Of a stretch of DNA of 64,000 nt, positions 18,659-45,856 are shown in pieces; within the stretch, counting starts at the first letter, position 1; the number at the start of each line of letters is the position of its first letter. The DNA lies in assembly GCA_002269645.1 (NCBI GenBank), contig NIVC01000575.1:1-64000 (forward strand). The letters are read 5' to 3'. Origin of the DNA: Macrostomum lignano (Eukaryota). Position numbers and translations under genes: made by a program. Under the pieces are notes generated by a model that was given only the letters and a program-made list of their open reading frames with translations, did no database searches and had not been told where the DNA came from.

Positions 18659-18777
18659 TTAAGAGTTTGTGAAGAATTTAATCACATCGGTGCTTTCTGG
18701 TGGTCAAGTTTGGCTAAGGTTATACAAGGTTTCTAGTGAGATGTGCCCAGCTTTGTGCCCAACAAGAGACAGGGGTG

Positions 18778-19332: not shown

Positions 19333-20029
19333 ATGAGTCACTGCTACCCTAAACGAACCACTTGATTGACTGACATCAATGTGGTCGGTCTAGTATGCCC
19401 GAGAAGTAAAGCAACGTTAGAACTCGCCCAGTCTTGCATGCAATACTCGTAAGTGTTTTTCATCTATTTTTCTTTCGGTTCGGCAGAATTTTGGGCACTT
19501 AGAGACTGCAGCAGCTGTTCAAGTCTGGAATCGGCTATTCATTTTTCTTTAACATAAAACTGAAAAAGCTTTTTTGTTTTTCTGCCTTTCGACAGCTGCA
19601 GCGAGTTTGCTCGTCAGAAAAACAATTTTCTGAGCGACGTATTGAAAGAATTCCGACAAATTGGGGAAATTGCTTGCCAAGTAGGCACCAGTTTACTGCG
19701 CGCCTTTGAGCTGGCTTCTGTCCCACCGTGTCTAGCAGAAAAGCATTTTTCTCTGGAGATAAACCGCTCCACCTCAGCAAATCGTTGCGGCACCCAAGCT
19801 CAAGCGGCTATTTTTGTCCTGCTCGAAAAACTTATTCTTCCCCGAGGCTGCTTCGTCACATTTGGATTGGTTAATCGGTTGCTTTCCTCCGCTTCTCCTA
19901 GAAAATTCTAATATTTTTCGTCCCAACTGATTGCCAGACAATTAAATCTTAATGCATGCGGATGTCCAAGGACTACTTGCAGTGTAATTTGAAGAGTTTT
20001 TTTCAATTATTCAAGGCCCAGTGTCTGCG

Positions 20030-21075
20030 TGTCCGTCTTAGTGTCTGCCTGTTTTACTGTCTTAGTGTCTGTCTGTCTTACTGTCTTAGTGTCTGTCTGT
20101 CTTACTGTCTTAGTGTCTGCCTGTCTTACTGTCTTAGTGTCTGTCTGTCTTACTGTCTTGGTGTCTGCCTGTCTTACTGTCTTAGTGTCTGTCTGTCTTA
20201 CTGTCTTAGTGTCTGTCTGTCTTACTGTCTTAGTGTCTGTCTGTCTTACTGTCTTGGTGTCTGTCTGTCTTACTGTCTTAGTGTCTGTCTGTCTTACTGT
20301 CTTGGTGTCTGCCTGTCTTACTGTCTTAGTGTCTGTCTGTCTTACTGTCTTAGTGTCTGTCTGTCTTACTGTCTTAGTGTCTGTCTGTCTTACTGTCTTA
20401 GTGTCTGTCTGTCTTACTGTCTTAGTGTCTGCCTGTCTTACTGTCTTAGTGTCTGTCTGTCTTACTGTCTTAGTGTCTGCCTGTCTTACTGTCTTAGTGT
20501 CTGTCTGTCTTACTGTCTTAGTGTCTGTCTGTCTTACTGTCTTAGTGTCTGTCTGTCTTACTGTCTTGGTGTCTGCCTGTCTTACTGTCTTAGTGTCTGT
20601 CTGTCTTACTGTCTTAGTGTCTGTCTGTCTTACTGTCTTAGTGTCTGTCTGTCTTACTGTCTTAGTGTCTGTCTGTCTTACTGTCTTAGTGTCTGTCTGT
20701 CTTACTGTCTTAGTGTCTGTCTGTCTTACTGTCTTAGTGTCTGTCTATCTTACTGTCTTAGTTTCTGTCTGTCTTACTGTCTTAGTGTCTGCCTGTCTTA
20801 CTGTCTTAGTGTCTGTCTGTCTTACTGTCTTAGTGTCTGTCTGTCTTACTGTCTTAGTGTCTGTCTGTCTTACTGTCTTAGTGTCTGTCTGTCTTACTGT
20901 CTTAGTGTCTGTCTGTCTTACTGTCTTAGTGTCTGCCTGTCTTACTGTCTTAGTGTCTGTCTGTCTTACTGTCTTAGTGTCTGTCTGTCTGTCTGTCTGT
21001 CTGTCTTACTGTCTTAGTTTCTGTCTGTCTTACTGTCTGACTGTTTGTCTGTCTGTCTGTCTGTCTTATTAGTGT
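20030..21075. repeat. 24-bp minisatellite cttagtgtctgtctgtcttactgt, ~42 copies, decaying into (GTCT)n
   Basis: Tandem array; the 353-aa and 347-aa ORFs are artefacts. Confidence 0.97.
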
Positions 21076-23490
21076 CTTTCTTAGTGACTTAGTGTCGAGA
21101 ACGAACCTTTCCGCCTGTAAGAAGTAGGACGCTGCACTTGATTTTCTTAGAATTGAGCTGGAGGCCGGTAAGGAGGGCCTCCTTGCGGCTCCTTGACAAA
21201 CCTAAATCGAAACAATTTGTCATATTGCTAGTGCATTTAATATACTCTCAAGAAAAAGGATTTTTTCCACCGAATTTGTCTATGGTAAAACCTGTACATG
21301 TCAGGTCTCGATGAGGGTGATGTTTCGAGACATTAGAAATTTTGGCACTAGTTAAAACAAATCGCTACTGGTTTCTATACAAAATACATGCAGCTTCAGA
21401 TCTGCCCCCCCCCCCCGGTAACCAAACCCAGAAGTTTGACGCCCGCCAGTATTCACGCTGTTCTGCAAGCTGTGACATATTTCTCATGCTATACTATACT
21501 TTACGGCAGCTACTATTGACACTACATGTTATATCTATAAGTCCCTATTAAGATCATGCTGCATATTGGGGCTGAATATGCGACAGGAATGGGAGGTCAG
21601 AAAACTCAGTGATGATTACATATTGTAGTTTAACGTGCGGTAGTGATGCAATAGCAGGCCCCATCTACAACAGGCAAACCGCCCAGAAATGCTTAACAAA
21701 TGTGTAGCAGCTCGAAAATTGAATATAATCTGACTAATTTCAGAATTTTTAATTCAAAGTTCATTCGGCATAAATAAATTGGTAAGGCTCTCGTTGGATA
21801 TATCAATTCGATTAGAAACTACTGCATTAGGCGAAATCTCATCCTAGTGCCGCAGTTCATTGTAACAGATCTACAATAAACCACTCATTGTCTTAGGCTT
21901 AAACCATACTTTTTAAGCTGAGGAGCTTTCGAAATTAAACCGAAGCGCTTGATTTAACGTGCATCATGATGTATCGTTTAATGGTTGTGAGACAAACGCT
22001 ACGAATCATTCAGGTTTTATGAAGTTAACTCAATAGTACAATAAAGCTACTTATTTGATGCATTTAGATTTTATTTAAACGAATAAACGTACTCTACGAA
22101 GGTTTTCGTCGTCATTAAGACAAATTGCAAAGAACAAACGCATCGAATAAAGTAACAATACCCCAGTAAATTTGGCTTTCATGTGTGCCTTTTTCATTCC
22201 AGGACAGAATCAGTGAGGCTGCAGATCATACACATACCTACCTCAATGAGAGACAAATCATTTTTAGTATATTTAGATACGTAGGATTCACTCCCTTTCT
22301 ACTGTAGCTGAGAGTTCGCGCTTGGCCCAAAGCATGACAATTTTAAAAAGTTAGTAACATTATAACAAAAGTATTAGGCAAAAGTAGGAACGATTGAAAC
22401 TAGAAAAAGATACAAAACATTTCAAATTTTTTTAGCTATGAAAAATGAAAATTTTGCATTTTTACACTTTTCTGTTAAATCGGTTTTTAATACTATCTGT
22501 CGCTAAACAAAAATTTAACTTGTAAAATACTGTCTTTTTATAAAACAGTACTTTAGCTTCAGCTTTACTTTAGCTTCACGATGCTGTTTCTAAGCTTGTT
22601 TGTTGATATTGTAATCTTTTAGTCTCACTCCAATAAGTTGTTTTATGTCTAGTTATTTCTAATTATAGCTTAAAACCCGATTTTATCCTGTTGGATTAAA
22701 TATATCGAACAGTTAGTTTGAACTGCTTGTGCAGTAGAAGTAATTGTTACTTGGATATTTTTCCGTATTCTATGGATTGAAAGAAACTACTTTATATTTA
22801 TCTAAACACAGTGTTGAAATGCTGTTTGTTTAGTGTTCATAAAGATAAAAAAACTGAAATAGCACCAAATGAATATAATTTTATTGTGTTGCTAACACAA
22901 TGATTCATACTAGCACGAGTCAAGCAACGCATTGCAATATTTAGCAATAAATAAAAAGCCGAAGATGTTCAAAGCAGAAATATGCACTGCAGTATTATTT
23001 TTATTTATAGCTCGTTACCAGATAAAGAAATATATTTATTTTATTTATAATTCATTCTACAACAATGTTTACTTAATGAACATTTTTATATTTGTTCTTA
23101 ACATAAATAAACAATTAGTGTTTATAAAATTTTGAGCTTATTTTTATTCATATAAAGATTTTCATTCAGATTAAAATATTTTATTTATAGTTAGAAGTCC
23201 ATCTATACAAAGCATCCATTTATCAAAATAAATATGCATAATTAAAAAGACTTTTGTTAAACAGAGAAGCTTCATTTTATACAATAGTTCCTTGGCATAC
23301 AGTGACCATGTAATAAAAATAACTATGTATTAAAAAGTATGCATATATAATTAACTTTTTAAGAGCTTTAGGTCTTATGCAACATGTATCTTACCAATAA
23401 ATATCTAAACATGTTATTTTTGCTCACTAAAATGCAGTTCCTAAAAATACAGACAAACTAATATTTTTTAATGCTTTGACTGTTCATGAT

Positions 23491-26400
23491 ATGGCAACAA
23501 AGACCCAAGCCTTCGCTGGTGGAGGGTCATCGTCTCTGCCTCCTGGTGGCCTTTCTCTGACCGAAATCTCACAGAAGCTGGAGAATCAGAAAATCCCCAT
23601 AGTTACGCACATCATCAGTGACGAGGACATTGGCAATGTTGTCGGTGAGAAGCTGCAAACAGTTGACCTGGAACGCGTGCTCAAGGTGCTCACGGATCCG
23701 CACTACGCAGGTCTGTATGACCGGCACGTGATGGCAATTGAACGTCTTCTGCGCCACTACAAGCAAGGCTTCCTTATGAAGGACCTTGTGCAGGTGCGCC
23801 GAATTCTTAACATCTGCGCAGATCGCATCGAGGAGGGTCTGGTCTGCTACGTGGAGCCCCTGGTTGACTGTCTGTGCGTCTGCGCGCTGCCCTTCCTCAT
23901 GGAGAAGGCATCAGACGAGCTTGCTTACCGTCAGATCAGCGTAGAGACCGCATCTCAGCTCGCTTTTCTCATGCGCGTCGACGTCAGCCGAGTCCGACTG
24001 CAGATCTGTCGGACGCTGGCGCAGATCTACGACGGCGAGCCGCCGCCACAAGACGTCAGGGATCACAAACCAGCTGGGAGAAAGTGAGTAGCTTAGGAAT
24101 GCTTTATTGAGCGGTATGGCTAGTTTATATATATGTTCCTATTCTTTCTCACTCCCCAGATACAACCAGGCCATCTGTGAGGAGAGCGACATCTCTGAGA
24201 CGCTGGTTCGAACCCTTAAGCTTTTGGACAAAGACCTGACAGTTCGCCTGGCGGTCATCAGTTTGCTACAGAAGCTGTCGGGTAACTCTACCCGCTGCTG
24301 CATCCAGATGCTCAGCGTCAACGCCGCCTACACTCTGTGCAGCCGTATGACAGACCCGGATCCGTCCGGTGAACTGCTGTTCCGCTCGGTTGAGATCCTC
24401 TGGAACCTGATGCAGCATGGCGATTCTGAGCAAGTTGCCAAGCAGCTTGCCTGTCAGGAGTGCGTCGCTCAACTGCGCGAGGCTTTTGTCTATCTGCTGC
24501 CAAGGACATTTTCCGTGTTCGACCGTCAGTTAAGGAACGACGTTCTGGTGTTGGTGCAGCTCCTGGCCGCTACCGACTGTCGGGCGCCGTTCATCGAGGT
24601 CGGCTTTCTCAAGCAGTTGACTCTGTTCGCAACCTTCGAGGAGGTCAAGAGTCACAGTCCACTGGTCAGGAACCTGAAACTGTCGAAGAACCACGAGGAT
24701 TTTGAACTCAAGAAGCTGCTCATAAGCACGCTCGTCAGCCTATCCAGCGATCCCTGTGCCCTGCCTGTTCTGTCTGAAGGCCACTTCATGCTGGCTCTGC
24801 TCTCCTATGTGAAGCCGAACGAGCCAACAAGCAAACCGAGAGAGCTGCCGCCGGCCTACGTGGAGGAGCTGCAGCTGCTGGCTTTGTCCGCCCTTGCTAC
24901 CGTGGGACCGAAGATGCAAGCTGACTTCGTCAGCTGCAACGGCTGCAACCGGCTTCTGGAATTGCTCTTCTGGTGCACGGAGGCCAGCGACGACTATCTC
25001 GGCTACGGCAACGCCTTCCACGGCGCAGGGGGCCGCGGCAGCAAGCGGGCCCAGATGCGGCGCACCTTGCGAGCGATCTCGGCAATGGTGACCACCAACA
25101 ACCCGGACATCCTGGCCGACTTTGTTGACCAAGATGCTATCGGTGCCCTAAGCGAGATTCTGGCCTCTTCTGTGTCGGCCGGGAACCGAACCGGACAAGC
25201 TGCAACAGCCGTAGTGAATGACGACGACACCATCGACTTGGAGATGAAGCGCGAGATGCTGGGCATCCTCAGCGGTCTCTGCGAGAACAGTCTGCACAAT
25301 AAAGACCTGTTCGGCCCGTCTGGTGTGGCTACGCTAGTGCAGTTCTTGCGCACGGACCCGGGGCTTCTGAGCTCTGGTCTTGGTCACTACCAGCTCGTTA
25401 TTGGTGCCATCGACGCTGTATGGTGCTGCGTGGTCGGCTCTTACACCACGGAGGACTGCTTCCTTGAACGAGAGGGTGTGTATCTGCTGCTGGACTTGCT
25501 GGAACGTTGCCCGTCGGATTTGCACAGCCTCATTCTTGGCGTGCTTCTCGATCTCAGCGAGAACGAGAAAACTCTGCCGCACTTGAAGACCTGGAAAGGC
25601 GGCCGCGAGGTGACGGCTCCGCATCTGTTCTGCGCGTTGTGGCGCGACACCGAAGCCAGCATTGGTTGTCCGCGCCGGCCAGACGGCTCCATCGGTGACC
25701 TGCTGTCTCCACTGATGGGCGACGCCCAGCGTAAGCAGCTGGTGACGCCGCAGCCGGCCAACTGGCCGAGCCGATCGATCGTTGAAGTCGCTGAGAACGT
25801 GCGCGCCAAGATCTATGCTCTGTTCTACCGGATCGGCTTTGTCGACCTGCCGGGCATCAATGCTGAAGATCACGTGACTCTGACGCTGATCGAGCGCTAC
25901 CTGGACTACAAGCTTGGCGAGGTGTGGGACGAGGTGCAGCGAGAGCTGGAGCTGGAGCAGGTGCGGCCTGTCACGCCAGACCGGGAGGCACTGGACTGGA
26001 TCAACAAGTGCACGGAGCAGGAGACACTTCTGGTTGCCAAGACCCAGTCGGAGCTCATGGACGCCAAGCGGGATCAGGAAGTCTCGGAAGAGCAGGCGCT
26101 ATACTCGGAGCTTCGCGAGGACCACCGCCAGAAGGAGAAAGCGATTAATGACTTCAGCGATTTTGTAGCGCGAACCTCGGACTACTCAAAGCTGCGCGAG
26201 GCAAAAACACGCCAGCTAGCATCGATTGAAGCGTCTCGCATTGTGCCGCTACAGCAGGACGGGGCAGCGTTCCACAGCACCGAGCTGGTCAACCTGCAGG
26301 CTACGGTAAGTCGGAAGGCATAGCAGTATAGCAGTTAAAACTTAAACCCTGAACTTAATAGAATAACCATCGACAACAAAGGTAGAAAGAAGGTCGTGAC

Positions 26401-27473: not shown

Positions 27474-28877
27474 ATCCCCCTTCCCCTGTTACATGCTGAA
27501 CTGTCTGTTTTTAATATAAAAACCATATGAAAAAATCCTACTAAACTACTTTTGCAAGTAGTTTACTACCTGTTGAGGAGATGTTGTATACTTTGTCATA
27601 ACTCAATTTCTATCAACTCATATTCCACGATTATAAACAACTATTTTATGGCTTGCAAAAATACTAGCAAGGTAAAACATTTACCTACAACCAATAGACA
27701 TCTTTTATGTACGATGCGGTCAGTTTTATTTTGAATCCGTTCTCCAAAGTTTCTTTAAAGATCAAATGCTACTAAATTTAAAAAAATTGACTTAACGTAC
27801 TCTTACTTATGTAAAACGTAACTGTTTACTTATGAGTATCTTAAAATGTCTCTCTTTGTATTAAAATAATTAAACCCACCACCAATTTCAAATATAATAT
27901 TGTTTGACAGATATGTGCCAGGTGGGCTGATTACAGCTCGTTAGTGCTCTGGCGAAAGTGCTCGGGACTTCTACTTTTGCTAAAAACAATATCGAATCCC
28001 GCCTTCCAAATTCACTTGCTTTTTAGCTCGTCTTATGCAGAGGCTGTCAAAAAAGACTTCTGAGCTCAAACATATTCAGCAATATTAAAAAATTTGCTAC
28101 CATTTGAGAATGCAAGTGTTGGCGCTTCAAACTCTCTCAATTTCGCGGAGAGGTGACGCTAGGCTATCAATGGTATCGAGACTAACCTCACTGCTTTGAT
28201 TTTCGGCGAGTCACCAACGCGTCTCTGTATCGCTGAGCCGGCCTGTTTCGTCCAAGCGACCTGTGACTCCAGCTACATCATCCACTAGACATTTTTTCAA
28301 CTGCCTGCTGGCATTTTTTCTTGTGTTGTCGCTGTTTTCGGGACATTGTTCGCTGCTAATGCTATAATTCAGAGATTTTTAGGGCATTTTCCTAATTTTG
28401 GAGCAGTGAAAGTTGATTGCGCGGTTCAATCAGGAAACAAACGCATGGAAGTAAGACAAGCTAAATAAAACTGTCTAAATGTCAAATGAATTTATAACAA
28501 AATCTGAGACGAATGTCACGTCTAAAGAAACAATCAAATCTGAGCAGTCATCCAAATCTTCTTGGCCGGAAGTCCTCTTCGGTAGACATGCAAATAATGT
28601 CTAAACAAGGCACGGAAATCTTTTTTTCAGCGTTGGTTTTAGAGGCAAAAATTCAGAACAAATGCATTAACTACAGTTCTTAACGGACATTGCAAATAGG
28701 CAACTTGTCTCGAAAGTTGAACGCACAATTTAATCGATAGCGGTGTCAGCGGTTTGTGAAGGATACGTGCGAACTCCTTTAATATTTAAAGCAGCAACAT
28801 TGAGCGACAACCGCAATTTCAGACCCAGTGCGCCTGAGCAAGAGTTGGAAAACCTACCTTGCGTCATCTGCAGTGCT

Positions 28878-28928
28878 GTTTGTCTGTCTGTCTGTCTGTC
28901 TGTCTTAGTGTCTGTCTGTCTGTCTTAG

Positions 28929-28977
<49 letters not shown>

Positions 28978-29028
28978 TAGTGTCTGTCTGTCTTAGTGTC
29001 TGTCTGTCTGTCTGTCTGTCTGTCTGGC

Positions 29029-29069
<41 letters not shown>

Positions 29070-29104
29070 TAGTGTCTGTCTGTCTGTCTTAGTGTCTGTC
29101 TTAG

Positions 29105-29145
<41 letters not shown>

Positions 29146-29206
29146 TAGTGTCTGTCTGTCTGTCTTAGTGTCTGTCTGTCTGTCTGTCTGTCTGTCTTTC
29201 TGTCTA

Positions 29207-29277
<71 letters not shown>

Positions 29278-29334
29278 TAGTGTCTGTCTGTCTTAGTGTC
29301 TGTCTGTCTGTCTTAGTGTCTGTCTGTCTTAGTA

Positions 29335-29389
<55 letters not shown>

Positions 29390-29456
29390 TAGTGTCTGTC
29401 TGTCTTAGTGTCTGTCTGTCTTAGTGTCTGTCTGTCTTAGTGTCTGTCTGTCTTAG

Positions 29457-29501
<45 letters not shown>

Positions 29502-29540
29502 TTCTGTCTATCTGTCTGTCTGTCTGTCTGTCTGTCTTAG

Positions 29541-29585
<45 letters not shown>

Positions 29586-29586
29586 T

Positions 29587-29649
<63 letters not shown>

Positions 29650-29688
29650 TTCTGTCTATCTGTCTGTCTGTCTGTCTGTCTGTCTTAG

Positions 29689-29769
<81 letters not shown>

Positions 29770-29810
29770 TAGTGTCTTCTGTCTGTATGTCTGTCTGTCT
29801 GTCTGTCTTG
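28878..29810. repeat. (GTCT)n microsatellite with cttagt interruptions, ~930 bp
   Basis: Directly visible. Confidence 0.97.
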
Positions 29811-30517
29811 ATTACTCTCTAGTGTGTAGTTTTGAAAGTTAATTATAAAAAGGAAATAGATGAGAGTAAGCCCATATTACAGATTCAAAGAAATCAGGTT
29901 AAGGGGTTCAAATTTGCAAGGTCCTAAGTGTGCAGTTTTCAGAAAAGTGTACCTGCCCCAGCCTGAAGCATTTAACTCTAACAGAAAATAGGCCAAAGGT
30001 TCCAAGTGGGCTAGTTAGCTAATTTGAAAAGAAGCTGCAGATGCAGTGAGTGTATATACAATAAAACTCAAAAGACTAAAAAATACTAAAAAAACAGTAA
30101 AAACTTTTTCATAGGTAGTATACACGGTTCAACTCAGACTCGGACAGTTCAAATTGGACTACTCATACTTTCCAAATGCGAACTCGCTAATCCACTGGCT
30201 GTCTTAGAGCGTCTTGCACCGCGGCCATCTTAAAATAAGCATTCAAAGCTGATTTGGCGGCTTCTGCAGTTCCTTTTACTGTCTGCCTCTCCAGCTCAAT
30301 TTTTTGCACGAATCCGCTTTACCGGGCAGTCAGATTGGGAAGAAATGATGATGCGGGAGGCTCTAGGGGAAGAGAGACGGGTCTGGAAAAAGCCGACCGC
30401 ATAGCTTCATTTTGCGCGCATTCAGACAAGAGCCCAGCCGGTCGGAACTGGTCTAGCATCGTCGTGACAGCAGTGTACAACAACGACAACAGCAACAACC
30501 ACTCTTCCCAGCTCGAT

Positions 30518-30686
30518 ATGTCACTCCAAGGCGCAGCCGCCGGTGTCTTAACAGAAGCCGGAAACGATGAAAGCGACCCCCACAATCTGCACTATTATTC
30601 GCCAATGTACAAGGCTGGAATTAGCGGCGAAGCTGACGCAATCTGGGTGCTGACCTCGGCCTTCATCATCTTCACAATGCAGAGCG
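30518..30686 (+). CDS. amt: Amt first exon A (N-terminus + TM1 copy A)
   Basis: MSLQGAAAGVLTEAGNDESDPHNLHYYSPMYKAGISGEADAIWVLTSAFIIFTMQSG; phase-1 donor G|GTTCGT. Confidence 0.8.
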
Positions 30687-33600
30687 GTTCGTGTCTAATT
30701 ATTTTTATAGGCACTAACACAAGCAAAAGTAAAGCTGGAAGTTGAAAATGAACAATATTACTAGGGGAAATTTTGGATATTTAAAAGCCTAATGGAAATT
30801 CAGAATTTTTAATTAAAATTTATTATTCCTTTCTTTGTTGCCCCCTCGTTGGGGGGCGCAGATTGCTAGTCAGAATATACTAAACACCAACTTCTGAAAT
30901 ATGGATAATATATAGGATCTTTTCATTTTGTGGTATTCTTACTTTCGTCCACTTACCAAAAAACCCTATTGATAGAGGGGTTAAGACTTTTCAGAGGTGT
31001 ATTTTGTTTCGTTTTGTTATTTACGATAATCATAACGCATACTAAATTACTTATTTTGCGAGAGTATTAAGGCATGAATATGTTCTGCTATATAACAACA
31101 CAAACAGTCCCAGATATCATGACATCAGGTCACAATCACGCAGCTAGCTATTTTCATACACATTAGAGTCACCGGATAAGGCAAACTTCCCGAGTGTGAT
31201 CATTCCCTATAGAGATTTTACACTCTGTCTGTCAAATTTCCTCTTGCCATTATTTCATACTACACGTATACTGTTATAATCAGTGCATTAGGACACATCA
31301 GTATCCAATACTGATAAGACGCCTCAGTATACTGCTCTAACTTGTGTCATTAATAATTCCCAATCCAACCCCTATTAGGACTTGCTGCACAGTCATCTAC
31401 AGTATATAGCTTCCTCTAATTCTGTCTTTTTTCGACGTCTTCTTGCCTTAACAGTCAAATATCTACGCCAAGAGCTCAATGTGAGTGGTCATGGTCTTTC
31501 CAAGAATTCTGCATCAAGCGCACAAGTTTCTATAGTGACGGCGGATAAATTTAGAGCGATTCAATCACAGATTTTATATTCCTGGTTGCAGCGCGAAAAC
31601 CAAGGGGTTCAGACCATGGTCCCATAGCTTCTGCTCCTCTCAAGCACTACCAGCAACGGCTGGTGTCAGTGGCCCTAACCTGGAATGCTGGATTGACATC
31701 TAACTAATATAGATGAATCTGCGGTTTCAATCGCGTTTCAAAACAAATACCCTACCCATAACGATCGATAGTTAAAGAAATAACTTCTGCAGACCTGATA
31801 ACTAGGATTCATTAAGCTGTGAAATTCTCATCAAATATCCAATAGCTACGATCCTACTCCCAAATCTTTCCTTTTTCATTTTGACTTAGTAGTAATCTGT
31901 GGTTTACTTTTGGTTTTAAAACTTTGCTCAAAATGAAAGTCTTCAAAAGCACCACAAATAACAACTGCATCAGCAAAGGGATAAGATCGAGAGCTAAGAG
32001 CGAGATACCTCTAGGGAAATGAATAATTTTGTCATTGTGAAGTATGAAGAGAAAGATTTCGACTGCACCAAAGTGGGATGAAAGGGGATGATGCAAAAGA
32101 CTATACCCAAGACTGCACCTGGCAACAGGTGATAGTGTAAGATGAGACGTTTGTTGATCACTCCGAGCCAATCAGCCTGGAAACAAAACAAGAAAGAAGG
32201 AAACGGAAATATAGAGGTGTAGGGGTTTGGTGCCCAGTCTAGCGAGAAATTTTCTAGAGCAGCCAAGAAAGACGAAGCAAAGGCTCCGTGAAAACATGTC
32301 CTCGACAGCAACTCGGACGCCACTTGTTCGGGAGCTGCAAAGTGACGCTATATGGATATTATCGTCCACATTCAGCATTTTCACGATGCAAAGCGGTGAG
32401 ACGTATTGATCTCTCAAACGTTTAGTGTTGGCTGTTGGGAAGCGTAGAACGCAGAGTTACAAGTACAGTAATGCGGCCAACCAATTTGTACAAATTACCA
32501 TCACGCACGACTTGACCATGCATGTTCAACGTGCATCGAACTACAACCTGTACCCTATGAACTCCACTAGGATTTGGTCTGCTTGAGTCCGGCTCGTGCA
32601 CGGCCAAAAACGAGGTTAACATTATGGTGAAGAACGTTGCGGACGTGGTGTTCGGTGGCTTCTCCTATTGGCTAGCCGGCTATTCATTCTCTTTCGGCAA
32701 CGACGACATGGCCAACCAGTTCTGCGGCTGGGGCAACTTCATGGTGATGACGCACAGGAACGACACGGGCTGGCTGTACTCCAAATTCTTCTTTCAGGCG
32801 TCGTTTGCGACAACCTCGACAACGATTGTGTCCGGAGCGATGGCTGAGCGGACAAAACTCGAGTCCTACATGCTATTCAGCTTTTTTAACACCTTCATCT
32901 TTTGCTTCCCGGCGCACTGGATGTGGGCCGAGGAAGGCTTCCTGTACGAGATGAGCTGCATGGACATAGCCGGCGCCGGACCGGTGCACTTGGTGGGCGG
33001 CACAACCGGCATGGTAGCGACTCTAATGCTGAAGCCGAGGCGGCACAGATTCTCCGATAGTTTTCCACAGATGGGCAGCCCGACCAACGCTCTGTTGGGA
33101 ATGTTCATGCTCTGGTGAGTCTAGGCTCTGGCAGCGCCTGTCGGCCCTTTTCATTTGCATTTTGGCTAGTTCAGCCTCTAGCTGGCGTTTGTGTTCACTT
33201 GCTGCTTGCTTTTGCCTTTCTGCCATGTACCTGTAATGAGGGAGCTGGCTGAGTTGCTCGTTTTTAACATGCTGTTCTATAGTGATCGGATATACAATTG
33301 CTTGTACTTAGAAATATATGGGCGGCCTTAGTCTTTGGTCGAAGCGTGCCCTTGCCAGTAGGAGTGGATAATACACCTGTGAGCAGTAATGCACCATAAA
33401 TGAATCGATTTAAAGTTTCTATGAACCCGGGTTAAGCACATGCCAACAGCAGTTTCAAGGCCGCGAATGACTTTTAAAAGTCAACTTATATAGTGCATAA
33501 ATGATTTAGCTTAGAGTCAAAACTCTAATACGCGAAACAGAATACTTGATGTATGCATTGGTTCAATTTTTCATCCGTGCAGGTGGGGCTGGTTGGGCTT

Positions 33601-35688
33601 CAACTGCGGCTCAACCTTCGGCATCAGTGGCGAAAAGTGGAAACTTGCGGCAAGGTTTGCGGCTTTATATTTTTTACTCTAATTTCCTTCTGAATACCAA
33701 ATACAAGACAGAAACTGGTTAACCTAAGCGACTTCTGATACTCGTACAAGTATAGCTTGTATAGCTTTTATTTGTCGAAGTTTGGGAATCTGAAAATACG
33801 TTTAGCACGGGAGCGTTTTCTACTCTAATTTCATATCTTGCAATGACATCCGACTTAAAAACTCCATGTCCCTTAATTTCATACTTCTGAAAATTTACTT
33901 CCCTATAACACCTACATCTGTATCCAGATATTTTAAGGCATGCAAGACAAAGCAACTTCATATTCCCTATTTTTGCACGCTATTGTATGGCACAGTGATA
34001 CGACACTTTTCAATTGTCCCATCAAAAATCAAGTTCTGAAGTCAAATGACCACTTTTGGAATTGTAAAGTCTGGGGCTATAAAAACACCCCCGTAATCAC
34101 AGGTCAACAAGTTCAGTGAGAAACATTAAGTGTAAACCATCACCGTATCTCAACCGTATGTAGATCTGCAGTCTCCACAATCATTGCTTCAATGGGCGGC
34201 GGCATGGTTGGCATGATATTCAGTTACCTGACTCGCCGACGGAAGTTTCACATCAGCCTAATCGTGAATAGCATCTTGGCTAGTCTGGTGGCCATCACAG
34301 GTGCGATTCACATGCTTTTTGCTACTGTATAGTTTGACAACCAGTGTATAAAAATGGCAAGGTTATCCATTATCTGTTTTACCCGAATTTCATCAAAAAT
34401 GCAGCGATGTGTGCGCTGGCAGAGCCCTGGCAGGGCTTCCTCATTGGTGTGGTGGGCGCCCTTCTGGCATGCCTAACCGAGAATGTGGTCCTCAAGCTGC
34501 AGATCGACGATCCAGTTGGTAGGTTAGGTATTGCTAATGAATGCTATGCATTGCGATCGTACATCTGATGCCGGACAAAATAACTCGTACTAAGCAAACA
34601 AACCTTTCAGGAGTGATTGCGGTACACTTCTCTGCGGCGGTGTGGAGCTTGCTCACACCTGGCCTGATGGCGCACCAGGATCCAGATTGGTCTGTGCTTC
34701 GAATCACCACTAGACACGACGGACTCTTTTATGTGAGTTAAGCTATTGTACAATTAAGAGAAGTACAGCGTTGAAAAATGTTCATCTCTTAAAAATTTAG
34801 GGTGGCGGCTTCAAATTGCTAGGCATCCAGACTGTCGCCGTACTCGCCATAGTTGGCTGGACGGCTGTGACATCATTCCTACTTTTAAAGGCTATCGACC
34901 TCATCATGGGCCTGCGCGTGTCCATTGAGCACGAAGAGCTCGGAGCTGATCTGGTTGAACACGACATCGGCGCCAGCCTGATGTTCGACAAGCGCACTCA
35001 GTCGCTGGTGCCGCCACGCGAGGAATCGGTGGCAGCGGCGATGGCGGCGGCTGCTACGGCAGCAGCAGCCGTTGGCGAGTTTCGTGGCGCCAACACGCGC
35101 AGCCTCGGTCAGTTGATGAAGAAGCGCAGCAGCCAGCGTCAGCGCCGCCGTCAGCGATGGCGCCCACCAGGCTTTGAACCCGTCTCCACTGTCGCAATAG
35201 AGAACTCCACGTCCACTGGCGCTGAAGAAGAAAATAATGGCGAAAGAGACGAGGACTATCGTGCTGGATGCTGCCAATGCTGCTGGTCGCGAACTTCAGC
35301 AAAGAAAACAGACAGACCCAACGGGGACAGCAACGGCGTTCGCTTATCGGAGCTGTCATTTCACCGGCGGAGAGGCCACATGGCCTCTTCACCATCTGTG
35401 ACAAGAAATGCCAGCACCACAGCTGCAACAGGCTCAGGGTTGCTTCATAGGCGCATCAAGGAGCATGGAAATCCGGGCGGTTCGTTGAGCCTCGGCAGCC
35501 GATTCTGGGGTCCCACACCAAAGACGGCTAAGACGCATAGAAGTCGCCGCCGAGACAGCGACCGCCTAACAGTTGCATGTAGCAACAGCACTAACTGGGC
35601 GTCAACTTCTTCAACGTCCGCAGTGACTTTCTTCATTCAAGACGGTGAGAGTCGCGTGGATCAACCCGAAAATCTAGTGCAGGCTTGA
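30518..35688 (+). CDS. amt: Ammonium transporter (Amt family). First exon A 30518-30686 or B 32296-32395; shared exons 32571-33114, 33583-33654, 34164-34300, 34405-34518, 34611-34732, 34801-35688.
   Basis: DAIW..FTMQSG|FGLLESG..KNEVNIMVKN, FQASFATTSTTIVSGAMAER, AHWMW, DIAGAGPVHLVGG (His1), WWGWLGFNCGST, IDDPVGVIAVH (His2), LGADLVEH; all splice phases are consistent. Confidence 0.95.
30790..30869 (+). mobile_element. Helitron 3'-end fragment (hairpin + CTAG|T)
   Basis: gccccctcgttggggggc-gcagattg-ctag|t, nearly the same as the 3' end at 52160-52187. Confidence 0.65.
32296..32395 (+). CDS. amt: Amt first exon B (N-terminus + TM1 copy B)
   Basis: MSSTATRTPLVRELQSDAIWILSSTFSIFTMQSG; phase-1 donor G|GTGAGA. 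Confidence 0.82.
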
Positions 35689-39130: not shown

Positions 39131-41256
39131 AAATGCTAAGAAAGCACGATTCTTTTCACTAAATTCTTTATAGCGTCGCTCTACTTTTACCAATTCTCTT
39201 CAAATATGACAAAAACAATCTTCAACCACTTTGACACAATCATATAAAATTTCGAGTCTCAGAGTTAATCCTGAACGGCACTGTGCACTTTTAAAGTTAG
39301 GCTGTTTTTGTAAGCAAGGCAGCTAGCTACCCTAACCTCCGCCTCTCTTTCCTTCCCTTATCTGGCAAGATGTGGAAAAGGGGTTTTAAAATTGACTAAC
39401 TTTTGGCTGCCATAAGTTTGCTCCACGTAAAGCGATTGACTTCAAACTTGACACAATTATTTATTGACTTATTCTCAGTCTAATTATTGTAAATTCTCAA
39501 TTCTGTAACTCAATCAGAACAGAAACTGTAAGCATGTGAAGCTTGTCTGCTTTTTCTGTTGTTTGCGCCGCTCACCCTACTCATTACTTTAGATCAAGGG
39601 TCAGCCAATAGGGCAGAGTGTACATACCTGCAGAGTACATACATGCAGAGTATTTTAGAATAACTTTTTTACTCTGCAGTTTACCAGTGGATGAGGGAGA
39701 TGGCAGTCAATAAGACTGGCAATGCGGCATAGTTTTTAAAAGGGAAAAATATGAAAAAGAGGTGCAATACAACTCTACTAAATTAGTCCTACCATTGATA
39801 TTTAAACAAAGTTTTACTTAAAGGCACTTTAAAATGCTTTCAAAAGAGTGAAACAGGTTGTTGGACTGCTTCACTGCAATAGAGCTAAAGATAGACAAAT
39901 ACCTCTTAGCCCTGACTGTCCATAAGAGTATTATGTGCTTGATCAGCCATACTTGTGGCTTTCTTTTGAGTGAGAATAGAAGCACTATGCAGTGTGTATT
40001 TCTATGGCTAAGGGTATGCAAACAAATGCATGCTGCTTACAGCAGGAAGCACTTATAGAAATTGGACTTTTGTGGCATTAAAGCTAAAATAAGCTGCTAA
40101 CTTTTAAGGTATATGATTTTTTTAACACGCATTAATACTTGTGGAAACAAGTAAAAGTAACACTACTTCTGGGACACCCCTTGTACCATGGTACTAATTT
40201 GAATATAATATATAAATCTGTACATATGCTAAAAATTTCCTTAATAAAACTAATCTAAAAACCATATAGATACTCTATAAAATGGTTAATCATATAGGGC
40301 CTAATGTAATGCCTAAATAAACTTTGATCCTAAGGTAATGATAAGTATAAAGTTACAATATATAAGATCATAAGAATACATTGTCATAGTTGACCTAACT
40401 TTAGAGTCATTTTTATTTTAAGTTATAAAAAAGCTTTTCTTTTTTAGATTTTAAACAATATGGATTTTTTGGATTTTTTAATTTAAATTTGGCCTAAGAA
40501 CTTTAAACTTTTTATGACTGTGCTTATTAGAACTACTTGCTTAAAATCATACATGTGAAACCTTGGAAATCAGCCAGCTGTTTCTATTTGCAACAAACAT
40601 ATGTATGTCACTATTGGTTAAGAGCAGTTGTGTGACTACTATTTTGTTCAATATTAATAGTGACTTACATGTCCTGCCCTATTTGAATAAGTGTAAAAAA
40701 CCTATAAACATATAACATAGGGTCTAAAATTGTAGTTCTAAAATACAATATAACACAAAACATATTAACTTTCATACTAAATGCAAGTGTAATACTAATT
40801 AGATAATGAGGCATATAGCCTTAATAAGATAGTTATAATTATGCTTGCCATTTACCCAAAAACTGTACCATGCTACAATACCACCTGCTATGACTCTAGC
40901 CACAATGCGACTACTAGAAAATTCCAAAATTGCGACAAATGGTTAGACACATTTTGTCCATATATTCCAATAGGGCATATGTGTTGCCAATAAAATGCTC
41001 AAGTGATTCCTGAAATTGTGCTTATAGATACTATAATATCTTAGTTATTATGGTATCTAGGTCTATGGTTGTTCGTGCCTAAGCCTAAGCATGCTTGAAA
41101 TGCTACTTGGCTATTTAGCTTAAGCCTAATATTGAATCAAGGGGATTCAAGGATTTCTAGAAAAGAAATGCTTATCCCCACAGTCCCATGCCAATAATTT
41201 CAATTTTATCCATACAGATCCATGTTGATAATTTTTAGCTTATCCCCATGGCAGCT

Positions 41257-41530
41257 CATACATGCGCAACCCCCCTGATTTACACTGGCCATGCGACTTA
41301 CTTTTTGACCAAAAATGCGACTTACCAAGTTACCTGTAAAAGAAACCTAACGCAATTTTGGGTAAACGGCAGGAGTATTCTATGACTGTCTTATAAGGGC
41401 TAAATGCCTCGTCATTTAATTAGTACTACCTCTGTATTTTTTAGGCTGGGCATTTTTGCGACTTACCCCTGGTCCACAACAATTTACGGTGGCCAGATCG
41501 GCCAGGTCGGCCAGCAGTTGCGCATGTATG
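41257..41530. mobile_element. hAT MITE, 274 bp, 14-bp perfect TIR catacatgcgcaac, 8-bp TSD tggcagct
   Basis: TIRs at 41257-41270 and 41517-41530; TSD on both sides; the empty site ccccatggcagcttattg is present in the sister copy at ~46257. Confidence 0.9.
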
Positions 41531-41636
41531 TGGCAGCTTATTGGAATAAATAACATTAAAATGAATTGGTTCAAAAACCATCTTTTTGTTTTCACTGTTT
41601 TACAAATCTTCCAAATAAACTACATGTACTGAATAC

Positions 41637-42311
41637 CAGTGATGGGCACCATTAAAATTATTTTGAACGCCACTAATTAGCACTGTCACTAACTAATAGA
41701 AAAAAATAATTAGCAATACCTTCTTATACTCAAGAAGGATAGCGAGATTATTAGCTTGAAATGGTGGTATAGGATTTATTAACCCCACTATCACCCTGTT
41801 GATATAGCCTGTTGCTTCGCATCATTGCTTAGAATATCAACTGAGTTAAACGTTGAATTCTTTGATTAAATTTTTAAATTAAATTAAATTAATCAACAAC
41901 TTTTTGCTAAGAAATTAAAAGTAGTAAGAAAACTTTTAAAAGTCAATAACAAAAACAAGATCAATTGTTGATAATGAAAGCAAAAAAAAGAAATTCAAAT
42001 TTTGTTTAGCATTTCTAAGAAAATTAGAAACATTAGATTTAATATAGGTAGATTTATGTAATCTTTAACTTATTACTTAAATAGGGTCTCATTTTAAGTA
42101 TTAAACAGTCATTAGGCCTAACCATTTAGTTTTATAACAAAAAATGACTTTAGCACAATTAGCAATTTTCAAAAAATATTAGTGGTGCTTTGAAAGCGCC
42201 AAGCGCACTAATTGGAATTTCAATTTAGCAAAATTAGTGGCACTAACAAAATGTTAGCAATGCTTTAGCAGAATTCAAATTTAGCAGCGCTAGTGCCCAT
42301 GCTCATCATTG
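41637..42311. mobile_element. hAT-like MITE, ~675 bp, TIR cagtgatgggcac (right copy imperfect), 8-bp TSD (c/t)tgaatac
   Basis: ctgaatac at 41629-41636 and ttgaatac at 42312-42319; the sister copy lacks the insert. Confidence 0.72.
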
Positions 42312-42925
42312 TTGAATACTGAATGATATTGCATACTTTGTCAGTCTTTGTTAAAAACCTTTTGACATTAAAAAGGGTTAGGGGCCTAATTTTTAATATT
42401 TGCTTAGCTGCTGGATTTGTTTAGAATGAACAAACAACCCAAAGATTAGGGTGAATGAGACTTGCAAAATTTGAAATTTAATATATATTAATAGGCCTAA
42501 TGATAATATTAAAAATAATAATGACAATATCAATTTAATGTCAGTACACAAAACTAAACACAAACAATCTGCATAATCTTAGCGGCTTAGCCATGGGATA
42601 AGCTGGAAATTATTGACACAGATCCATATGGAATATGGATAAAATTGGAATTGTTAGCACGGGACTATGGGAATGGGGATAAGCACTTCTTTTTAGAAAT
42701 AGGGAAAAAAGAAAGGCAAGCTTGTATTTTAGCTAAATCTAAATGTACTTAATGCTATTGCTAAATCTCTTATTTCATATTTATAGGCCTTAAGCCTAAT
42801 GGCTAAGGCTTGTTATTATTATTAAGTTAATTCAAGACACAAAGTCACTTAAAAATATGTTTTTAAGTTTTTAAGATAGTCATTCCCCAAGGGCAAGGCT
42901 ATTTGCCACTATGTTTGCCATAATA

Positions 42926-44554
42926 ATGTGAGGGTTTCACCATAGATATTCAGACAAACATTCAAAACGATTGTCTGTAACTTTAAACAAAATTGACCCG
43001 CTTCAATCATCTTTTTGGCAAATATTTACGCAAGTGTTGGGCGTCGAATAAGCTTTAATTTATTAACTGAAGTAAAAAACCTTCTGACATACATTGATTT
43101 TAAAATTGCTTAGCAACACTCTGATTAGACATTGCTTTACCATTGACTGAAATTGTTTTGATCGTAGCAGCCTAAAAGCAGATACTGGATTAAAAAATGC
43201 TTTGATTTACTCTTTACGCATGTCTCAGCTTTAAAATGACACGTCAGGCGTCGCAAAAGACAGCTTTGATGCTGAGATATTCGACACTAAACATTGCTTT
43301 GCGCGAACTCATATTCAGAAATTTCACTGATTTTTATCGATATTTGTGCAGCTGCCATGTCCTTGTTTTTCATTAGAATCTCATCAAATTCTAGTCATGT
43401 CCAGTTTAAACCTGGACTTCTGTTAAACTGTCTTCAGTTTTTGATTTTTAAAGATTCCTGCCTTTATCTTGCATAGATTCTACCTGAGTCAGTGAGTCAG
43501 TGAGAGTACATTCGTACATATGGAGACCAATCATGACTTTTTTACCGCTTTGCAGTTCAAATATATATATGAGCATACAAGAAACATGTTCCAACTGTTA
43601 TTGAGAGAAATTGATGTTGCTTTTATTAACAGTCAATGGCAATTAATATGAAGCAAATAGTTTATTTGTTATGTTTTTACTTTTTTTTGCTTGGCTTCTG
43701 CTATCCAAATTGGAATGAGGTAAGCGGTGGGAATAAAAAGGAAGAATTTTTTTGACTCTTGTTGCAACCCAATAGCTATGTACTTCATACTTTTTAGATT
43801 GAACAGGCGATTTCTAATGTACTGCTAAGCTTTCCAATCCCTACAGACTATTGTAGCAGTTCTCAACTTTATTTCTGTCTTGACTTCTAGACTTGGAATA
43901 CGGAACAACCTAAGGAACCGCATGAAAATATTTAATTGGATAAAGATGTTTTCTAAAAACAGCTCAAGTCGTGACGCATCTTCTTCTCACCTCAGTCCAT
44001 CAACTGCTGCTCCTTCTGAGACCGAAGCAAGTGACATTGAAATAGATCAGTTTAGATCCCATGGCCATGAATACAACCATTTCAATTGTGAACCTGCTTT
44101 GCTTACGAGTACGAGCACTAGCCTTCCATTTGATACCATTAGCTCACTTAACTCTGAAATAGTTCAAGGACGGTTTCAAATGTTGAGATTTAGTGTCGAA
44201 TATCTCAGCATCAAAGCTGTCTTTTGCGACACCTGACGTGTCATTTTAAAGCTGAGACATGTGTAAAGAGTAAATCAAAGCATTTTTTAATCCAGTATCT
44301 GCTTTTAGGCTGCTACGATCAAAACAATTTCAGTCAATGGTAAAGCAATGTCTAATCAGAGTGTTGCTAAGCAATTTTAAAATCAATGTATGTCAGAAGG
44401 ATTTTTACTTCAGTTAATAAATTAAAGCTTATTCGACGTCCAACACTTGCGTAAATATTTACCAAAAAGATGGTTGAAGCGGGTCAATTTTGTTTAAAGT
44501 TACAGACGATCGTTTTGAATGTCTGTCTGAATATCTGTCGTGAAACCCTCACAT
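42926..44554. mobile_element. Non-autonomous Mutator/foldback-like element, 1629 bp, 366-bp TIRs, 9-bp TSD gccataata
   Basis: 42926-43291 is the reverse complement of 44189-44554 with about 10 mismatches by eye; exact TSD at 42917-42925 and 44555-44563. Confidence 0.92.
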
Positions 44555-45666: not shown

Positions 45667-45856
45667 CAGGGGCGTAGGGGAGGGGGGATAGGGGGGGGAT
45701 GTATCCCCCCGAAGAGCCTGACCAAAACTTTTTTGTTGCCCTTGTTGCTATATGCTACCATGTGACTCTTTCATAGCACTTTTACCTTAGTGTATCCCCC
45801 CGTAGAAAATTCACCTTGGTGTATCCCCCTGTAGGAAATTCCTGGCTACGCCCCTG
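45667..45856. mobile_element. hAT MITE, 190 bp, TIR caggggcgtag, 8-bp TSD gatatatc
   Basis: caggggcgtag ... ctacgcccctg; TSD at 45659-45666 and 45857-45864. Confidence 0.9.

What the first reader, a model, noticed from the sequence alone, without database searches (positions are those of the whole stretch)
30518..32571. Ammonium transporter with two paralogous TM1-coding first exons
Seen: exon A (DAIWVLTSAFIIFTMQSG) and exon B (DAIWILSSTFSIFTMQSG) share 14/18 residues, each has its own ATG and unrelated N-terminus, and both end in a phase-1 donor fitting the single acceptor at 32571. Their synonymous sites differ extensively, implying an old duplication kept by selection. B has a polar Ile-to-Ser change in mid-helix. 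A phase-compatible acceptor (ttttctag| at 32257) also precedes B, so B could be an internal exon. Inference: alternative promoters swap the first membrane helix and extracellular N-terminus, giving tissue-specific (e.g. excretory versus sensory) or hetero-trimeric isoforms. I know of no such arrangement described for animal Amts.
Basis: partly seen in the sequence, partly recalled or inferred. Interest (0 to 1): 0.75.

Follow-up and report, generated by a model that had tools for sequence, protein, structure and literature searches.

The report
Ammonium transporter with two alternative first exons
A flatworm ammonium-transporter gene carries two interchangeable first exons, each encoding its own start and first membrane helix, and the same A-type/B-type exon pair is found in a ribbon worm and in molluscs, so it looks like an ancient, selected and apparently undescribed way of making two versions of the transporter.

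Summary
The window is Macrostomum lignano or a very close relative and holds one Amt gene, with common exons 2-7 at 32571-35688 (+). Two exon-1 candidates lie upstream: A (30518-30686) and B (32296-32395). Each has an ATG, an intact ORF and a phase-1 GT donor that fits the acceptor at 32571. Either one completes a full-length PF00909 domain.

A and B share 14/18 TM1 residues but no detectable nucleotide similarity. Synonymous sites are saturated (pS 0.95) while pN is 0.15.

The new evidence is comparative. Lineus longissimus (Nemertea) RefSeq isoforms X2 and X1 differ only in this exon, and the genomic order is the same: A, then B, then exon 2. Lottia has three such exons and Haliotis two, some unannotated. 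Bivalve models use the B-type.

Macrostomum B matches Lineus B and Mya B at 18/20 residues, but its own exon A at only 14/20. The duplication therefore probably predates the flatworm/nemertean/mollusc split.

No M. lignano transcript data could be reached, so use of both exons in this species is inferred. The idea that B is an internal exon is not supported. Tissue specificity and hetero-trimers are untested. I found no published description.

The parts
30518..30686 (+). Exon 1A (A-type, near-canonical). It encodes the start codon, a 39-aa N-terminus and TM1 (ADAIWVLTSAFIIFTMQS + G). The donor is G|GTTCGT, phase 1.
   Evidence: It matches Lineus A and Lottia 1a at 16/20 over the last 20 residues. 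Isoform A gives PF00909 at 358.8 bits, profile positions 2-395 of 399.
30510..30511 (+). Candidate 3' splice / SL trans-splice acceptor (cactcttccCAG|CTCGAT) 6 nt upstream of the exon A ATG. An SL-donated AUG would be in frame here. Inferred only.
   Evidence: One search shows 11/15 pyrimidines and a CAG. The M. lignano SL ends in ATG, and about 30% of genes are trans-spliced (PMC8629364).
30687..32570 (+). Intron removed in isoform A (1884 nt). It contains exon 1B.
   Evidence: tblastn finds no other Amt-like coding remnant in it.
32256..32262 (+). Function unproven.
32296..32395 (+). Exon 1B (B-type). It encodes the start codon, a 16-aa N-terminus and TM1 (SDAIWILSSTFSIFTMQS + G). The donor is G|GTGAGA, phase 1, which fits the M. 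lignano consensus GT[G/A]AG.
   Evidence: It matches Lineus B and Mya B at 18/20. Isoform B gives PF00909 at 360.2 bits, profile positions 2-395 of 399. The donor consensus is from PMC8629364.
32396..32570 (+). Intron removed in isoform B (175 nt). The acceptor is ccactAG|.
32571..33114 (+). Common exon 2 (GFGLLESG...MLW).
   Evidence: It is 99% identical to the M. lignano UniProt models P0001 and P0186.
33583..35688 (+). Common exons 3-7: 33583-33654, 34164-34300, 34405-34518, 34611-34732 and 34801-35688 including the stop. The long C-terminal tail in exon 7 is provisional.
   Evidence: The junctions agree with P0001.

Best explanation
The locus is a single Amt-type ammonium-transporter gene of Macrostomum lignano, or a very close relative. 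It has two mutually exclusive alternative first coding exons.

Each exon supplies its own AUG, a different extracellular N-terminus, and a different version of transmembrane helix 1. Each splices through a phase-1 donor to the same exon 2 acceptor at 32571. The two products are otherwise identical transporters of 681 aa (isoform A) and 658 aa (isoform B).

Exon A is the near-canonical metazoan TM1. Exon B belongs to a distinct B-type class with the signature S-D-[A/S]-[I/T]-W-I-L-S-S-T-F. That class is also present in the orthologous gene of a nemertean and of molluscs. The exon pair therefore arose by an ancient tandem duplication, possibly by capture of the first exon of a decayed tandem paralogue, before these phyla split. 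Both copies have been kept by purifying selection since.

Shown: the exon anatomy, the shared phase, the intact ORFs, protein-level constraint with saturated synonymous sites, and the cross-phylum conservation and order of the two exon classes.

Inferred: that both are transcribed in M. lignano, that choice is made at the 5' end, and that the swap tunes N-terminus/TM1-dependent properties such as trimer stability, the extracellular vestibule or gating. The 5'-end choice could be by separate start sites, or by SL trans-splicing to exon B competing with cis-splicing from exon A.
For: Anatomy and ORFs.

Only one Amt gene and two TM1 segments are in the window.

Both isoforms give a full-length PF00909 match, at 358.8 and 360.2 bits.

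Constraint: pS 0.95 against pN 0.15, and simulation P about 1e-4.

There is no nucleotide similarity between A and B or their flanks.

Lineus longissimus:
- Isoforms X1 (XP_064620897.1) and X2 (XP_064620898.1) are both 655 aa.
- They are identical from residue 33 on and differ only in this exon.
- In the genome, A (ends 10094) is followed by B (ends 18736) and then exon 2 (20852).

Lottia has three such exons, each with an ATG and a G|GT donor, upstream of one exon 2.

Haliotis has an unannotated second exon.

The RefSeq models of Mya, Pecten and Argopecten use the B-type.

The identity matrix shows that exon classes group across phyla rather than within a gene.

The Macrostomum Amt domain is most similar to exactly this orthogroup, at 498-563 bits against 480 or less for other paralogues.

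The eukaryotic Amt/Mep N-terminus contacts the neighbouring monomer, and TM1 conformation affects channel closure: PMC4852598.
Against: There is no transcript evidence for M. lignano. No database protein joins exon A or exon B to exon 2, and the two UniProt models start inside exon 2.

The exon A donor, GTTCGT, departs from the species consensus GT[G/A]AG. Two constitutive donors of the same gene also depart from it.

Several spiralian Amt genes I examined have a single TM1 exon: Lymnaea, Elysia, Plakobranchus and one Capitella gene. The arrangement is therefore not universal.

The exon-class argument rests on only about 20 residues, so convergence cannot be excluded. The functional difference between the isoforms is entirely untested.
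Confidence: 0.75

Rival explanations
1. Only exon B is used. It is proximal, has a 175-nt intron and a consensus GTGAG donor. Exon A would be an inactive relic of a decayed upstream paralogue.
For: B has the better donor and lies closest to exon 2. The bivalve RefSeq models use only the B-type.
Against: Exon A keeps its ATG, ORF and phase-1 GT donor. It has the canonical residue at every TM1 position that is at least 90% conserved across animal Amts. It matches Lineus A and Lottia 1a at 16/20. A-type exons are the annotated first exon in Lottia, Haliotis, Gigantopelta and Lineus X2.
Confidence: 0.08
2. Only exon A is used, and exon B is a pseudo-exon that is never spliced.
For: B is the more divergent copy. 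It carries a Macrostomum-specific polar Ser in the helix and has lower hydropathy, 1.03 against 1.43 for A.
Against: B matches Lineus B and Mya B at 18/20 even though its synonymous sites are saturated relative to A. It has an intact ATG, ORF and consensus donor. The B-type is the annotated coding exon in Lineus X1, Mya, Pecten and Argopecten.
Confidence: 0.07
3. B is an internal cassette exon. A would splice to 32258 and then B to 32571, giving a 727-aa protein with two tandem TM1 helices.
For: The join is in frame and open, and a ttttctAG acceptor-like site exists.
Against: The site has a weak polypyrimidine tract (7/15) and TAG rather than CAG. In Lineus, Lottia and Haliotis stop codons lie 1-11 codons upstream of the B-type ATG, so those exons cannot be in-frame internal exons. 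A second TM1 would invert the topology of the 11-helix Amt fold (PMC3604715; PMC4852598); the inversion itself is inference. An in-frame join is expected by chance one time in three.
Confidence: 0.03
4. The A/B pairs of Macrostomum, Lineus and the gastropods arose by independent, convergent exon duplications rather than one ancient event. This rival concerns only the origin, not the present function.
For: Several spiralian Amt genes have one TM1 exon. Copy number varies: two in Macrostomum and Lineus, three in Lottia. The class-defining changes T->S and A->T are single-nucleotide steps. Both Macrostomum exons share DAIW, whereas A-types elsewhere have DATW.
Against: Three to four shared derived positions, together with the same A-then-B order, occur in three phyla. 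B exons are closer across phyla (18/20) than A and B are within one gene (14/20).
Confidence: 0.15
5. This is an assembly artefact, with two haplotype or homeologue versions of exon 1 placed in tandem.
For: M. lignano is a hidden polyploid (PMC10468722 abstract). The UniProt models differ from the window by one residue, so another copy exists.
Against: There is no nucleotide similarity between the A and B regions, either in the exons or the flanks. Synonymous sites are saturated. The same arrangement is seen in independent assemblies of three other species.
Confidence: 0.01

Closest known systems
Lineus longissimus 'putative ammonium transporter 3' isoforms X1 and X2 (XP_064620897.1 / XP_064620898.1; RefSeq models)
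   Same: It is the best-scoring Amt in my one-directional BLAST comparison, at 563 bits. It has two alternative first coding exons of A-type and B-type in the same genomic order. It has the same phase-1 intron after MQS|G. The isoforms are identical from exon 2 on.
   Different: The introns are much longer, at 10.8 kb and 2.1 kb. Both N-termini are short, and the A exon carries an NLT sequon. The B exon lacks the Macrostomum-specific Ile->Ser change. These are automatic gene models, and I found no published description.
Lottia gigantea LOTGIDRAFT_126447 and the Haliotis rufescens XP_046350570.2 locus
   Same: Several TM1-coding first exons lie upstream of one exon 2. Each has an ATG and a G|GT phase-1 donor. 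The canonical exon is the most distal.
   Different: Lottia has three copies (1a, 1b, 1c). The extra exons are unannotated. They carry N-glycosylation sequons and cysteine pairs that the Macrostomum exons lack.
Variable-first-exon and tandem-duplicated mutually exclusive exon systems in membrane proteins, for example UGT1A and clustered protocadherin first exons, or sodium-channel exon 5N/5A (recalled from general knowledge, not tested here)
   Same: Homologous tandem exons of the same phase join a common downstream exon. This gives isoforms that differ in one structural module.
   Different: Here the module is the start codon, N-terminus and TM1 of an Amt/Mep/Rh transporter. I found no description of such an arrangement for that family. 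In M. lignano, SL trans-splicing may also take part in 5'-end choice.
N-terminal determinants of trimer stability in eukaryotic Amt/Mep (fungal Mep2 structures, PMC4852598; tomato LeAMT1;1, Graff et al. 2011 as cited there)
   Same: The part being swapped is the extracellular N-terminus plus TM1. In Mep2 this region contacts the neighbouring monomer and shapes the vestibule, and the cytoplasmic end of TM1 takes part in channel closure.
   Different: Those are single-isoform proteins studied by mutation. Deleting the N-terminus of Mep2 did not impair growth. The functional weight of the swap is therefore uncertain.

Membership tests
Amt/Mep/Rh ammonium transporters (Pfam PF00909), Amt branch | A full-length match to PF00909 above the gathering score, with either first exon | tested here: met
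   Isoform A scores 358.8 bits and isoform B 360.2 bits, against a cut-off of 23.2. Both cover profile positions 2-395 of 399.
Amt/Mep/Rh ammonium transporters (Pfam PF00909), Amt branch | Conserved pore motifs: Asp plus the first His (D-x-A-G-x-x-x-V-H) and the second His of the twin-His pair | tested here: met
   In the alignment to 6EU6, DIAGAGPVH aligns with DFAGATVVH and DDPVGVIAVH aligns with DDPVSAIAVH. The best solved relatives are Amt proteins (E 7.5e-45), with Rh proteins far weaker (E 3e-7).
Amt/Mep/Rh ammonium transporters (Pfam PF00909), Amt branch | Eleven transmembrane helices with the N-terminus outside | tested here: inconclusive
   The crude hydropathy scan does not resolve the helices. 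Topology is inferred from homology only.
Amt/Mep/Rh ammonium transporters (Pfam PF00909), Amt branch | Ammonium/ammonia transport activity | not testable with these tools
   This needs yeast mep-null complementation or oocyte electrophysiology.
Alternative (mutually exclusive) first exons from tandem exon duplication | Two homologous exons in tandem on the same strand upstream of one common exon | tested here: met
Alternative (mutually exclusive) first exons from tandem exon duplication | Same splice phase, a shared acceptor, and an own start codon and intact ORF for each | tested here: met
Alternative (mutually exclusive) first exons from tandem exon duplication | Both copies under purifying selection or conserved in other species | tested here: met
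   (pS 0.95, pN 0.15, P about 1e-4). (cross-phylum exon classes).
Alternative (mutually exclusive) first exons from tandem exon duplication | Mature transcripts carry one exon or the other, not both | not testable with these tools
   No M. lignano transcript-derived protein is in the databases. The only indirect support is the pair of Lineus RefSeq isoform models.
Spiralian Amt orthogroup with A-type/B-type first exons (Lineus, Lottia, Haliotis, Mya, pectinids) | The Amt domain is most similar to members of this group rather than to other paralogues | tested here: met
   One search gives 498-563 bits for group members against 372-480 for others. This was a one-directional BLAST, not a phylogeny.
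Spiralian Amt orthogroup with A-type/B-type first exons (Lineus, Lottia, Haliotis, Mya, pectinids) | B-type signature S/T-D-[A/S]-[I/T]-W-I-L-S-S-T-F, with the A exon distal and the B exon proximal to exon 2 | tested here: met
SL trans-spliced genes of M. lignano | [quoted passage not shown] | tested here: inconclusive
   One search finds CAG acceptor-like sites 6 nt upstream of the A ATG and 33 nt upstream of the B ATG. Neither matches the motif from PMC8629364 exactly. No read data are available.

The most novel reading that the evidence does not exclude
The A/B first-exon pair would be a roughly Cambrian-age, conserved molecular switch in a spiralian Amt gene. Exchanging the extracellular N-terminus and TM1 would change trimer assembly (including A/B hetero-trimers) or gating and transport mode, in a cell-type-specific way. 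In M. lignano the choice would be made by competition between cis-splicing from exon A and spliced-leader trans-splicing onto exon B, rather than by two promoters.
Probability: 0.2. Interest if true: 0.7.

Novelty: new member of a known kind. Interest (0 to 1): 0.5.

Why it matters
Amt proteins are the main ammonium channels of invertebrates, with roles in excretion, symbiosis and ammonia sensing. TM1 is among their most conserved segments: 94 of 127 sampled TM1 sequences, nearly all animal, share the core motif TSAF, and most of these read DDATWILTSAFIIFTMQSG in full.

A second TM1 version kept alongside the canonical one in the same gene across flatworms, nemerteans and molluscs implies a function that a single isoform cannot supply. 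This offers a natural experiment on what the N-terminus and TM1 contribute to trimer stability, the vestibule or gating.

It also has a practical side. Current gene models miss these exons. The M. lignano UniProt entries lack exon 1 altogether, and the extra Lottia and Haliotis exons are unannotated. Expression and functional studies that use one cDNA per gene may therefore overlook an isoform.

Tried and rejected
1. Transcript evidence through protein databases. The full A-isoform query and the short B-junction query returned no protein joining either exon to exon 2. The only M. lignano entries, P0001 and P0186, start inside exon 2.

2. A paralogous or homeologous M. lignano locus through the look-up of encoding contigs on P0001. 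It is not on record.

3. Recent duplication or haplotype mis-assembly. Rejected, because blastn finds no A/B similarity.

4. An exhaustive representative search with the 34-aa exon B peptide. It returned only two multi-stretch matches (6 and 13 stretches), which I took to be repetitive or low-complexity sequence without inspecting them. It was uninformative about the taxonomic spread of the B-type.

5. The Pecten maximus locus. The fetched range begins at residue 120, so its 5' exons are not covered.

6. Other spiralian and deuterostome Amt loci. Lymnaea, Elysia, Plakobranchus and Capitella KB308820 have a single TM1 exon. Two Capitella loci have no TM1 within 10 kb upstream. Apostichopus has no intron at this position.

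7. NCBI isoform sets of Osmia, Apis, Apostichopus and Acanthaster. None differs in TM1.

8. Literature searches. I found no description of alternative TM1 exons in Amt genes, and no paper on M. lignano Amt. Andrade et al. 2005 is not held.

9. The hydropathy-based helix count was too crude to use.
Full report
**What is in the sequence**

The region holds one Amt-type ammonium-transporter gene on the + strand. A six-frame read and a tblastn with a mollusc Amt find all parts of the PF00909 domain between 32571 and about 34970. They find exactly two segments that encode the first transmembrane helix, at 30632-30688 and 32341-32397. A lower-threshold scan finds no third copy, and every other hit is 18 bits or less.

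My gene model is:

| Exon | Coordinates |
|---|---|
| 1A | 30518-30686 |
| 1B | 32296-32395 |
| 2 | 32571-33114 |
| 3 | 33583-33654 |
| 4 | 34164-34300 |
| 5 | 34405-34518 |
| 6 | 34611-34732 |
| 7 | 34801-35688 (with stop) |

- Exon A ends gcg|GTTCGT and exon B ends gcg|GTGAGA.
- Both are phase 1 and both fit the acceptor ccactag|GA at 32571, restoring ...FTMQSGFGLLESG.
- Isoform A is 681 aa and isoform B is 658 aa.
- Each gives a full-length PF00909 match, at 358.8 and 360.2 bits, over profile positions 2-395 of 399.
- The twin-His and Asp motifs are present.

**Source organism**

The best database hit is a pair of Macrostomum lignano UniProt models, A0A1I8HU72 and A0A1I8H913. They are 99% identical and differ from the window by one residue, which points to a second gene copy. 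Both models begin at MVKNVAD inside exon 2, so they lack exon 1 altogether.

**Is the A/B resemblance more than chance?**

- The cores share 14/18 residues.
- At the DNA level, 17 of 54 positions differ, 10 of them at third codon positions.
- Seven of the 13 codons for identical residues differ.
- Nei-Gojobori gives pS 0.95 (saturated) and pN 0.15.
- With 17 random substitutions, the chance of keeping at least 13/18 residues is about 1e-4.
- blastn finds no similarity between the two exons or their flanks.

This excludes a recent duplication or a haplotype assembled in tandem. The interval between A and B contains no remnants of further Amt exons.

**Comparative evidence**

This is the decisive part.

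*Lottia gigantea.* The closest mollusc gene, LOTGIDRAFT_126447, has three TM1-coding first exons upstream of a single exon 2. They end at L001 10112, 23536 and 27127, and exon 2 starts at 31425. Each has its own ATG and a G|GT donor at the same codon position. Two of the three are unannotated.

*Lineus longissimus (nemertean).* RefSeq lists isoform X1 (MGGYEDLMSGDPPSDAIWILSSTFIIFTMQSG...) and isoform X2 (MAATNLTAISMTHDDATWILTSAFIIFTMQSG...).
- Both are 655 aa and are identical from residue 33 onward.
- In the genome the canonical exon comes first (L009, ends 10094). The B-type exon follows (ends 18736), then exon 2 (20852).
- This is the same order as in the window.

*Haliotis rufescens.* It has an unannotated second exon, MDNCSTTKIGLSWNCSCHDEDPSSDSIWILTSTFVIFTMQSG, with donor G|GTCGGT, about 0.9 kb after the annotated one.

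*Bivalves.* The RefSeq models of Mya arenaria, Pecten maximus and Argopecten irradians use a B-type exon.

*Exon classes.* Identity over the last 20 residues of exon 1:

| Comparison | Identity |
|---|---|
| Macrostomum B vs Lineus B | 18/20 |
| Macrostomum B vs Mya B | 18/20 |
| Macrostomum B vs Macrostomum A | 14/20 |
| Macrostomum A vs Lineus A | 16/20 |
| Macrostomum A vs Lottia 1a | 16/20 |

The exon classes therefore group across phyla rather than within a gene. The Macrostomum Amt domain is also most similar to exactly this set of genes, at 498-563 bits against 480 or less for other paralogues.

The simplest reading is one duplication before flatworms, nemerteans and molluscs diverged, with both exons maintained since.

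The arrangement is not universal.
- Lymnaea, Elysia, Plakobranchus and one Capitella gene have a single TM1 exon.
- Apostichopus has no intron at this position.
- The exon-class argument rests on about 20 residues, so convergent duplication remains possible. I give it about 0.15.

**How it most likely works**

Each exon is a first coding exon, and the mature mRNA carries one or the other.

Three points weigh against it.
- The site is weak, with 7/15 pyrimidines and TAG rather than CAG.
- In Lineus, Lottia and Haliotis a stop codon sits 1-11 codons upstream of the B-type ATG, so those exons cannot be in-frame internal exons.
- A protein with two tandem TM1 helices would invert the rest of the 11-helix fold. 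This last point is inference from the known architecture.

*Spliced-leader trans-splicing.* M. lignano trans-splices about 30% of its genes with a 35-nt leader that ends in AUG (PMC8629364).
- A good acceptor-like site, cactcttccCAG|, lies 6 nt upstream of the exon A ATG. A CAG lies 33 nt upstream of the exon B ATG.
- At both sites the leader's AUG would be in frame.
- Choice of 5' end could therefore involve trans-splicing rather than, or in addition to, two promoters. This is untested.

*What the swap changes.* It changes the extracellular N-terminus (39 against 16 residues, unrelated in sequence) and the outer and middle part of TM1.
- The class-defining differences are T->S, A->T, T->I and D->S.
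[quoted passage not shown] The cytoplasmic end of TM1 takes part in channel closure. However, an N-terminal deletion still supported growth (PMC4852598).
- An effect on trimer stability, the vestibule or gating is therefore plausible but not shown.
- Tissue specificity and hetero-trimers are untested.

**What is not shown**

I could not reach any M. lignano transcript data.
- No database protein joins exon A or exon B to exon 2.
- The UniProt model is not on record in the contig index.
- A representative search with the exon B peptide was uninformative.

Use of both exons in this species therefore rests on sequence integrity, selection and the parallel in other phyla. The Lineus isoforms are RefSeq models, and I could not inspect their read support.

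**Novelty**

Alternative first exons from tandem duplication are a well-known kind of arrangement. For Amt genes I found no description in seven literature searches. The two Lineus isoforms do exist as automatic RefSeq models. I therefore file this as a new member of a known kind. The added point of interest is that the pair appears to be conserved across three phyla and is missed by several current gene models.

**Scores**

- Interest: 0.5.
- Confidence in the main explanation: 0.75.

Noticed in passing
L001 23380-23538 and 26983-27129 (Lottia gigantea KB202719.1); L011 10972-11028 (Haliotis rufescens JALGQA010000001.1): These are unannotated TM1-coding first exons inside the first intron of annotated Amt genes. 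Each has an ATG, N-glycosylation sequons, cysteine pairs and a G|GT phase-1 donor.
   Followed up: yes
window 32624-33114 and UniProt A0A1I8HU72 / A0A1I8H913 (P0001, P0186): Both M. lignano database models start at MVKNVAD inside exon 2, so they lack TM1. P0186 also reads through the exon 4-5 intron. They differ from the window by one residue (T->A in MVMTHRND), which points to a second gene copy and is consistent with the hidden polyploidy of the species.
   Followed up: partly
window 28876-29808: There is a (CTGT)n microsatellite of about 0.9 kb (117 copies of an 8-nt unit, 84% matches). It ends about 0.7 kb upstream of the exon A start codon.
   Followed up: no
window 18772-19332 and 20035-21062: There are two minisatellites: a 21-nt unit x 26.7 (97% matches) and a 24-nt unit x 43 (94% matches). 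The 353-aa 'ORF' at 19956-21017 is an artefact of the second array and has no Pfam hit.
   Followed up: partly
window 23476-26323 (+): The upstream neighbour is a CFAP69 (cilia- and flagella-associated protein 69) gene. Two long ORFs together cover the PF21049 profile (870 and 164 bits).
   Followed up: partly
window 57974-59647 (-): There is a 557-aa uninterrupted ORF with a full-length amiloride-sensitive sodium channel (DEG/ENaC, PF00858) match. It appears to be intronless.
   Followed up: no
window 4214-6208 (-): There are fragments of an ionotropic glutamate-receptor-like gene: a Lig_chan-Glu_bd match at 59 bits, and a weak ANF_receptor match below the cut-off.
   Followed up: no
window 40000-56000: This is a long AT-rich block (GC 0.31-0.37) with no ORF above 118 aa. 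It contrasts with 0.41-0.60 GC elsewhere in the window.
   Followed up: no
L009 3552-7603 (Lineus), L001 1870-5398 (Lottia), L005 (Apostichopus): Amt genes sit in tandem or head-to-head arrays in several animals. The Lineus neighbour and one Capitella gene have a TSTF/TSTS-type TM1 as their only first exon. This fits an origin of the alternative exons by capture of the first exon of a decayed tandem paralogue.
   Followed up: partly
window 30512-30517 and 32263-32295: At the best CAG acceptor-like site upstream of each first exon, the AUG that ends the M. lignano spliced leader would be in frame with the Amt ORF, and the frame is open. This could be chance, at one in three for each site.
   Followed up: partly
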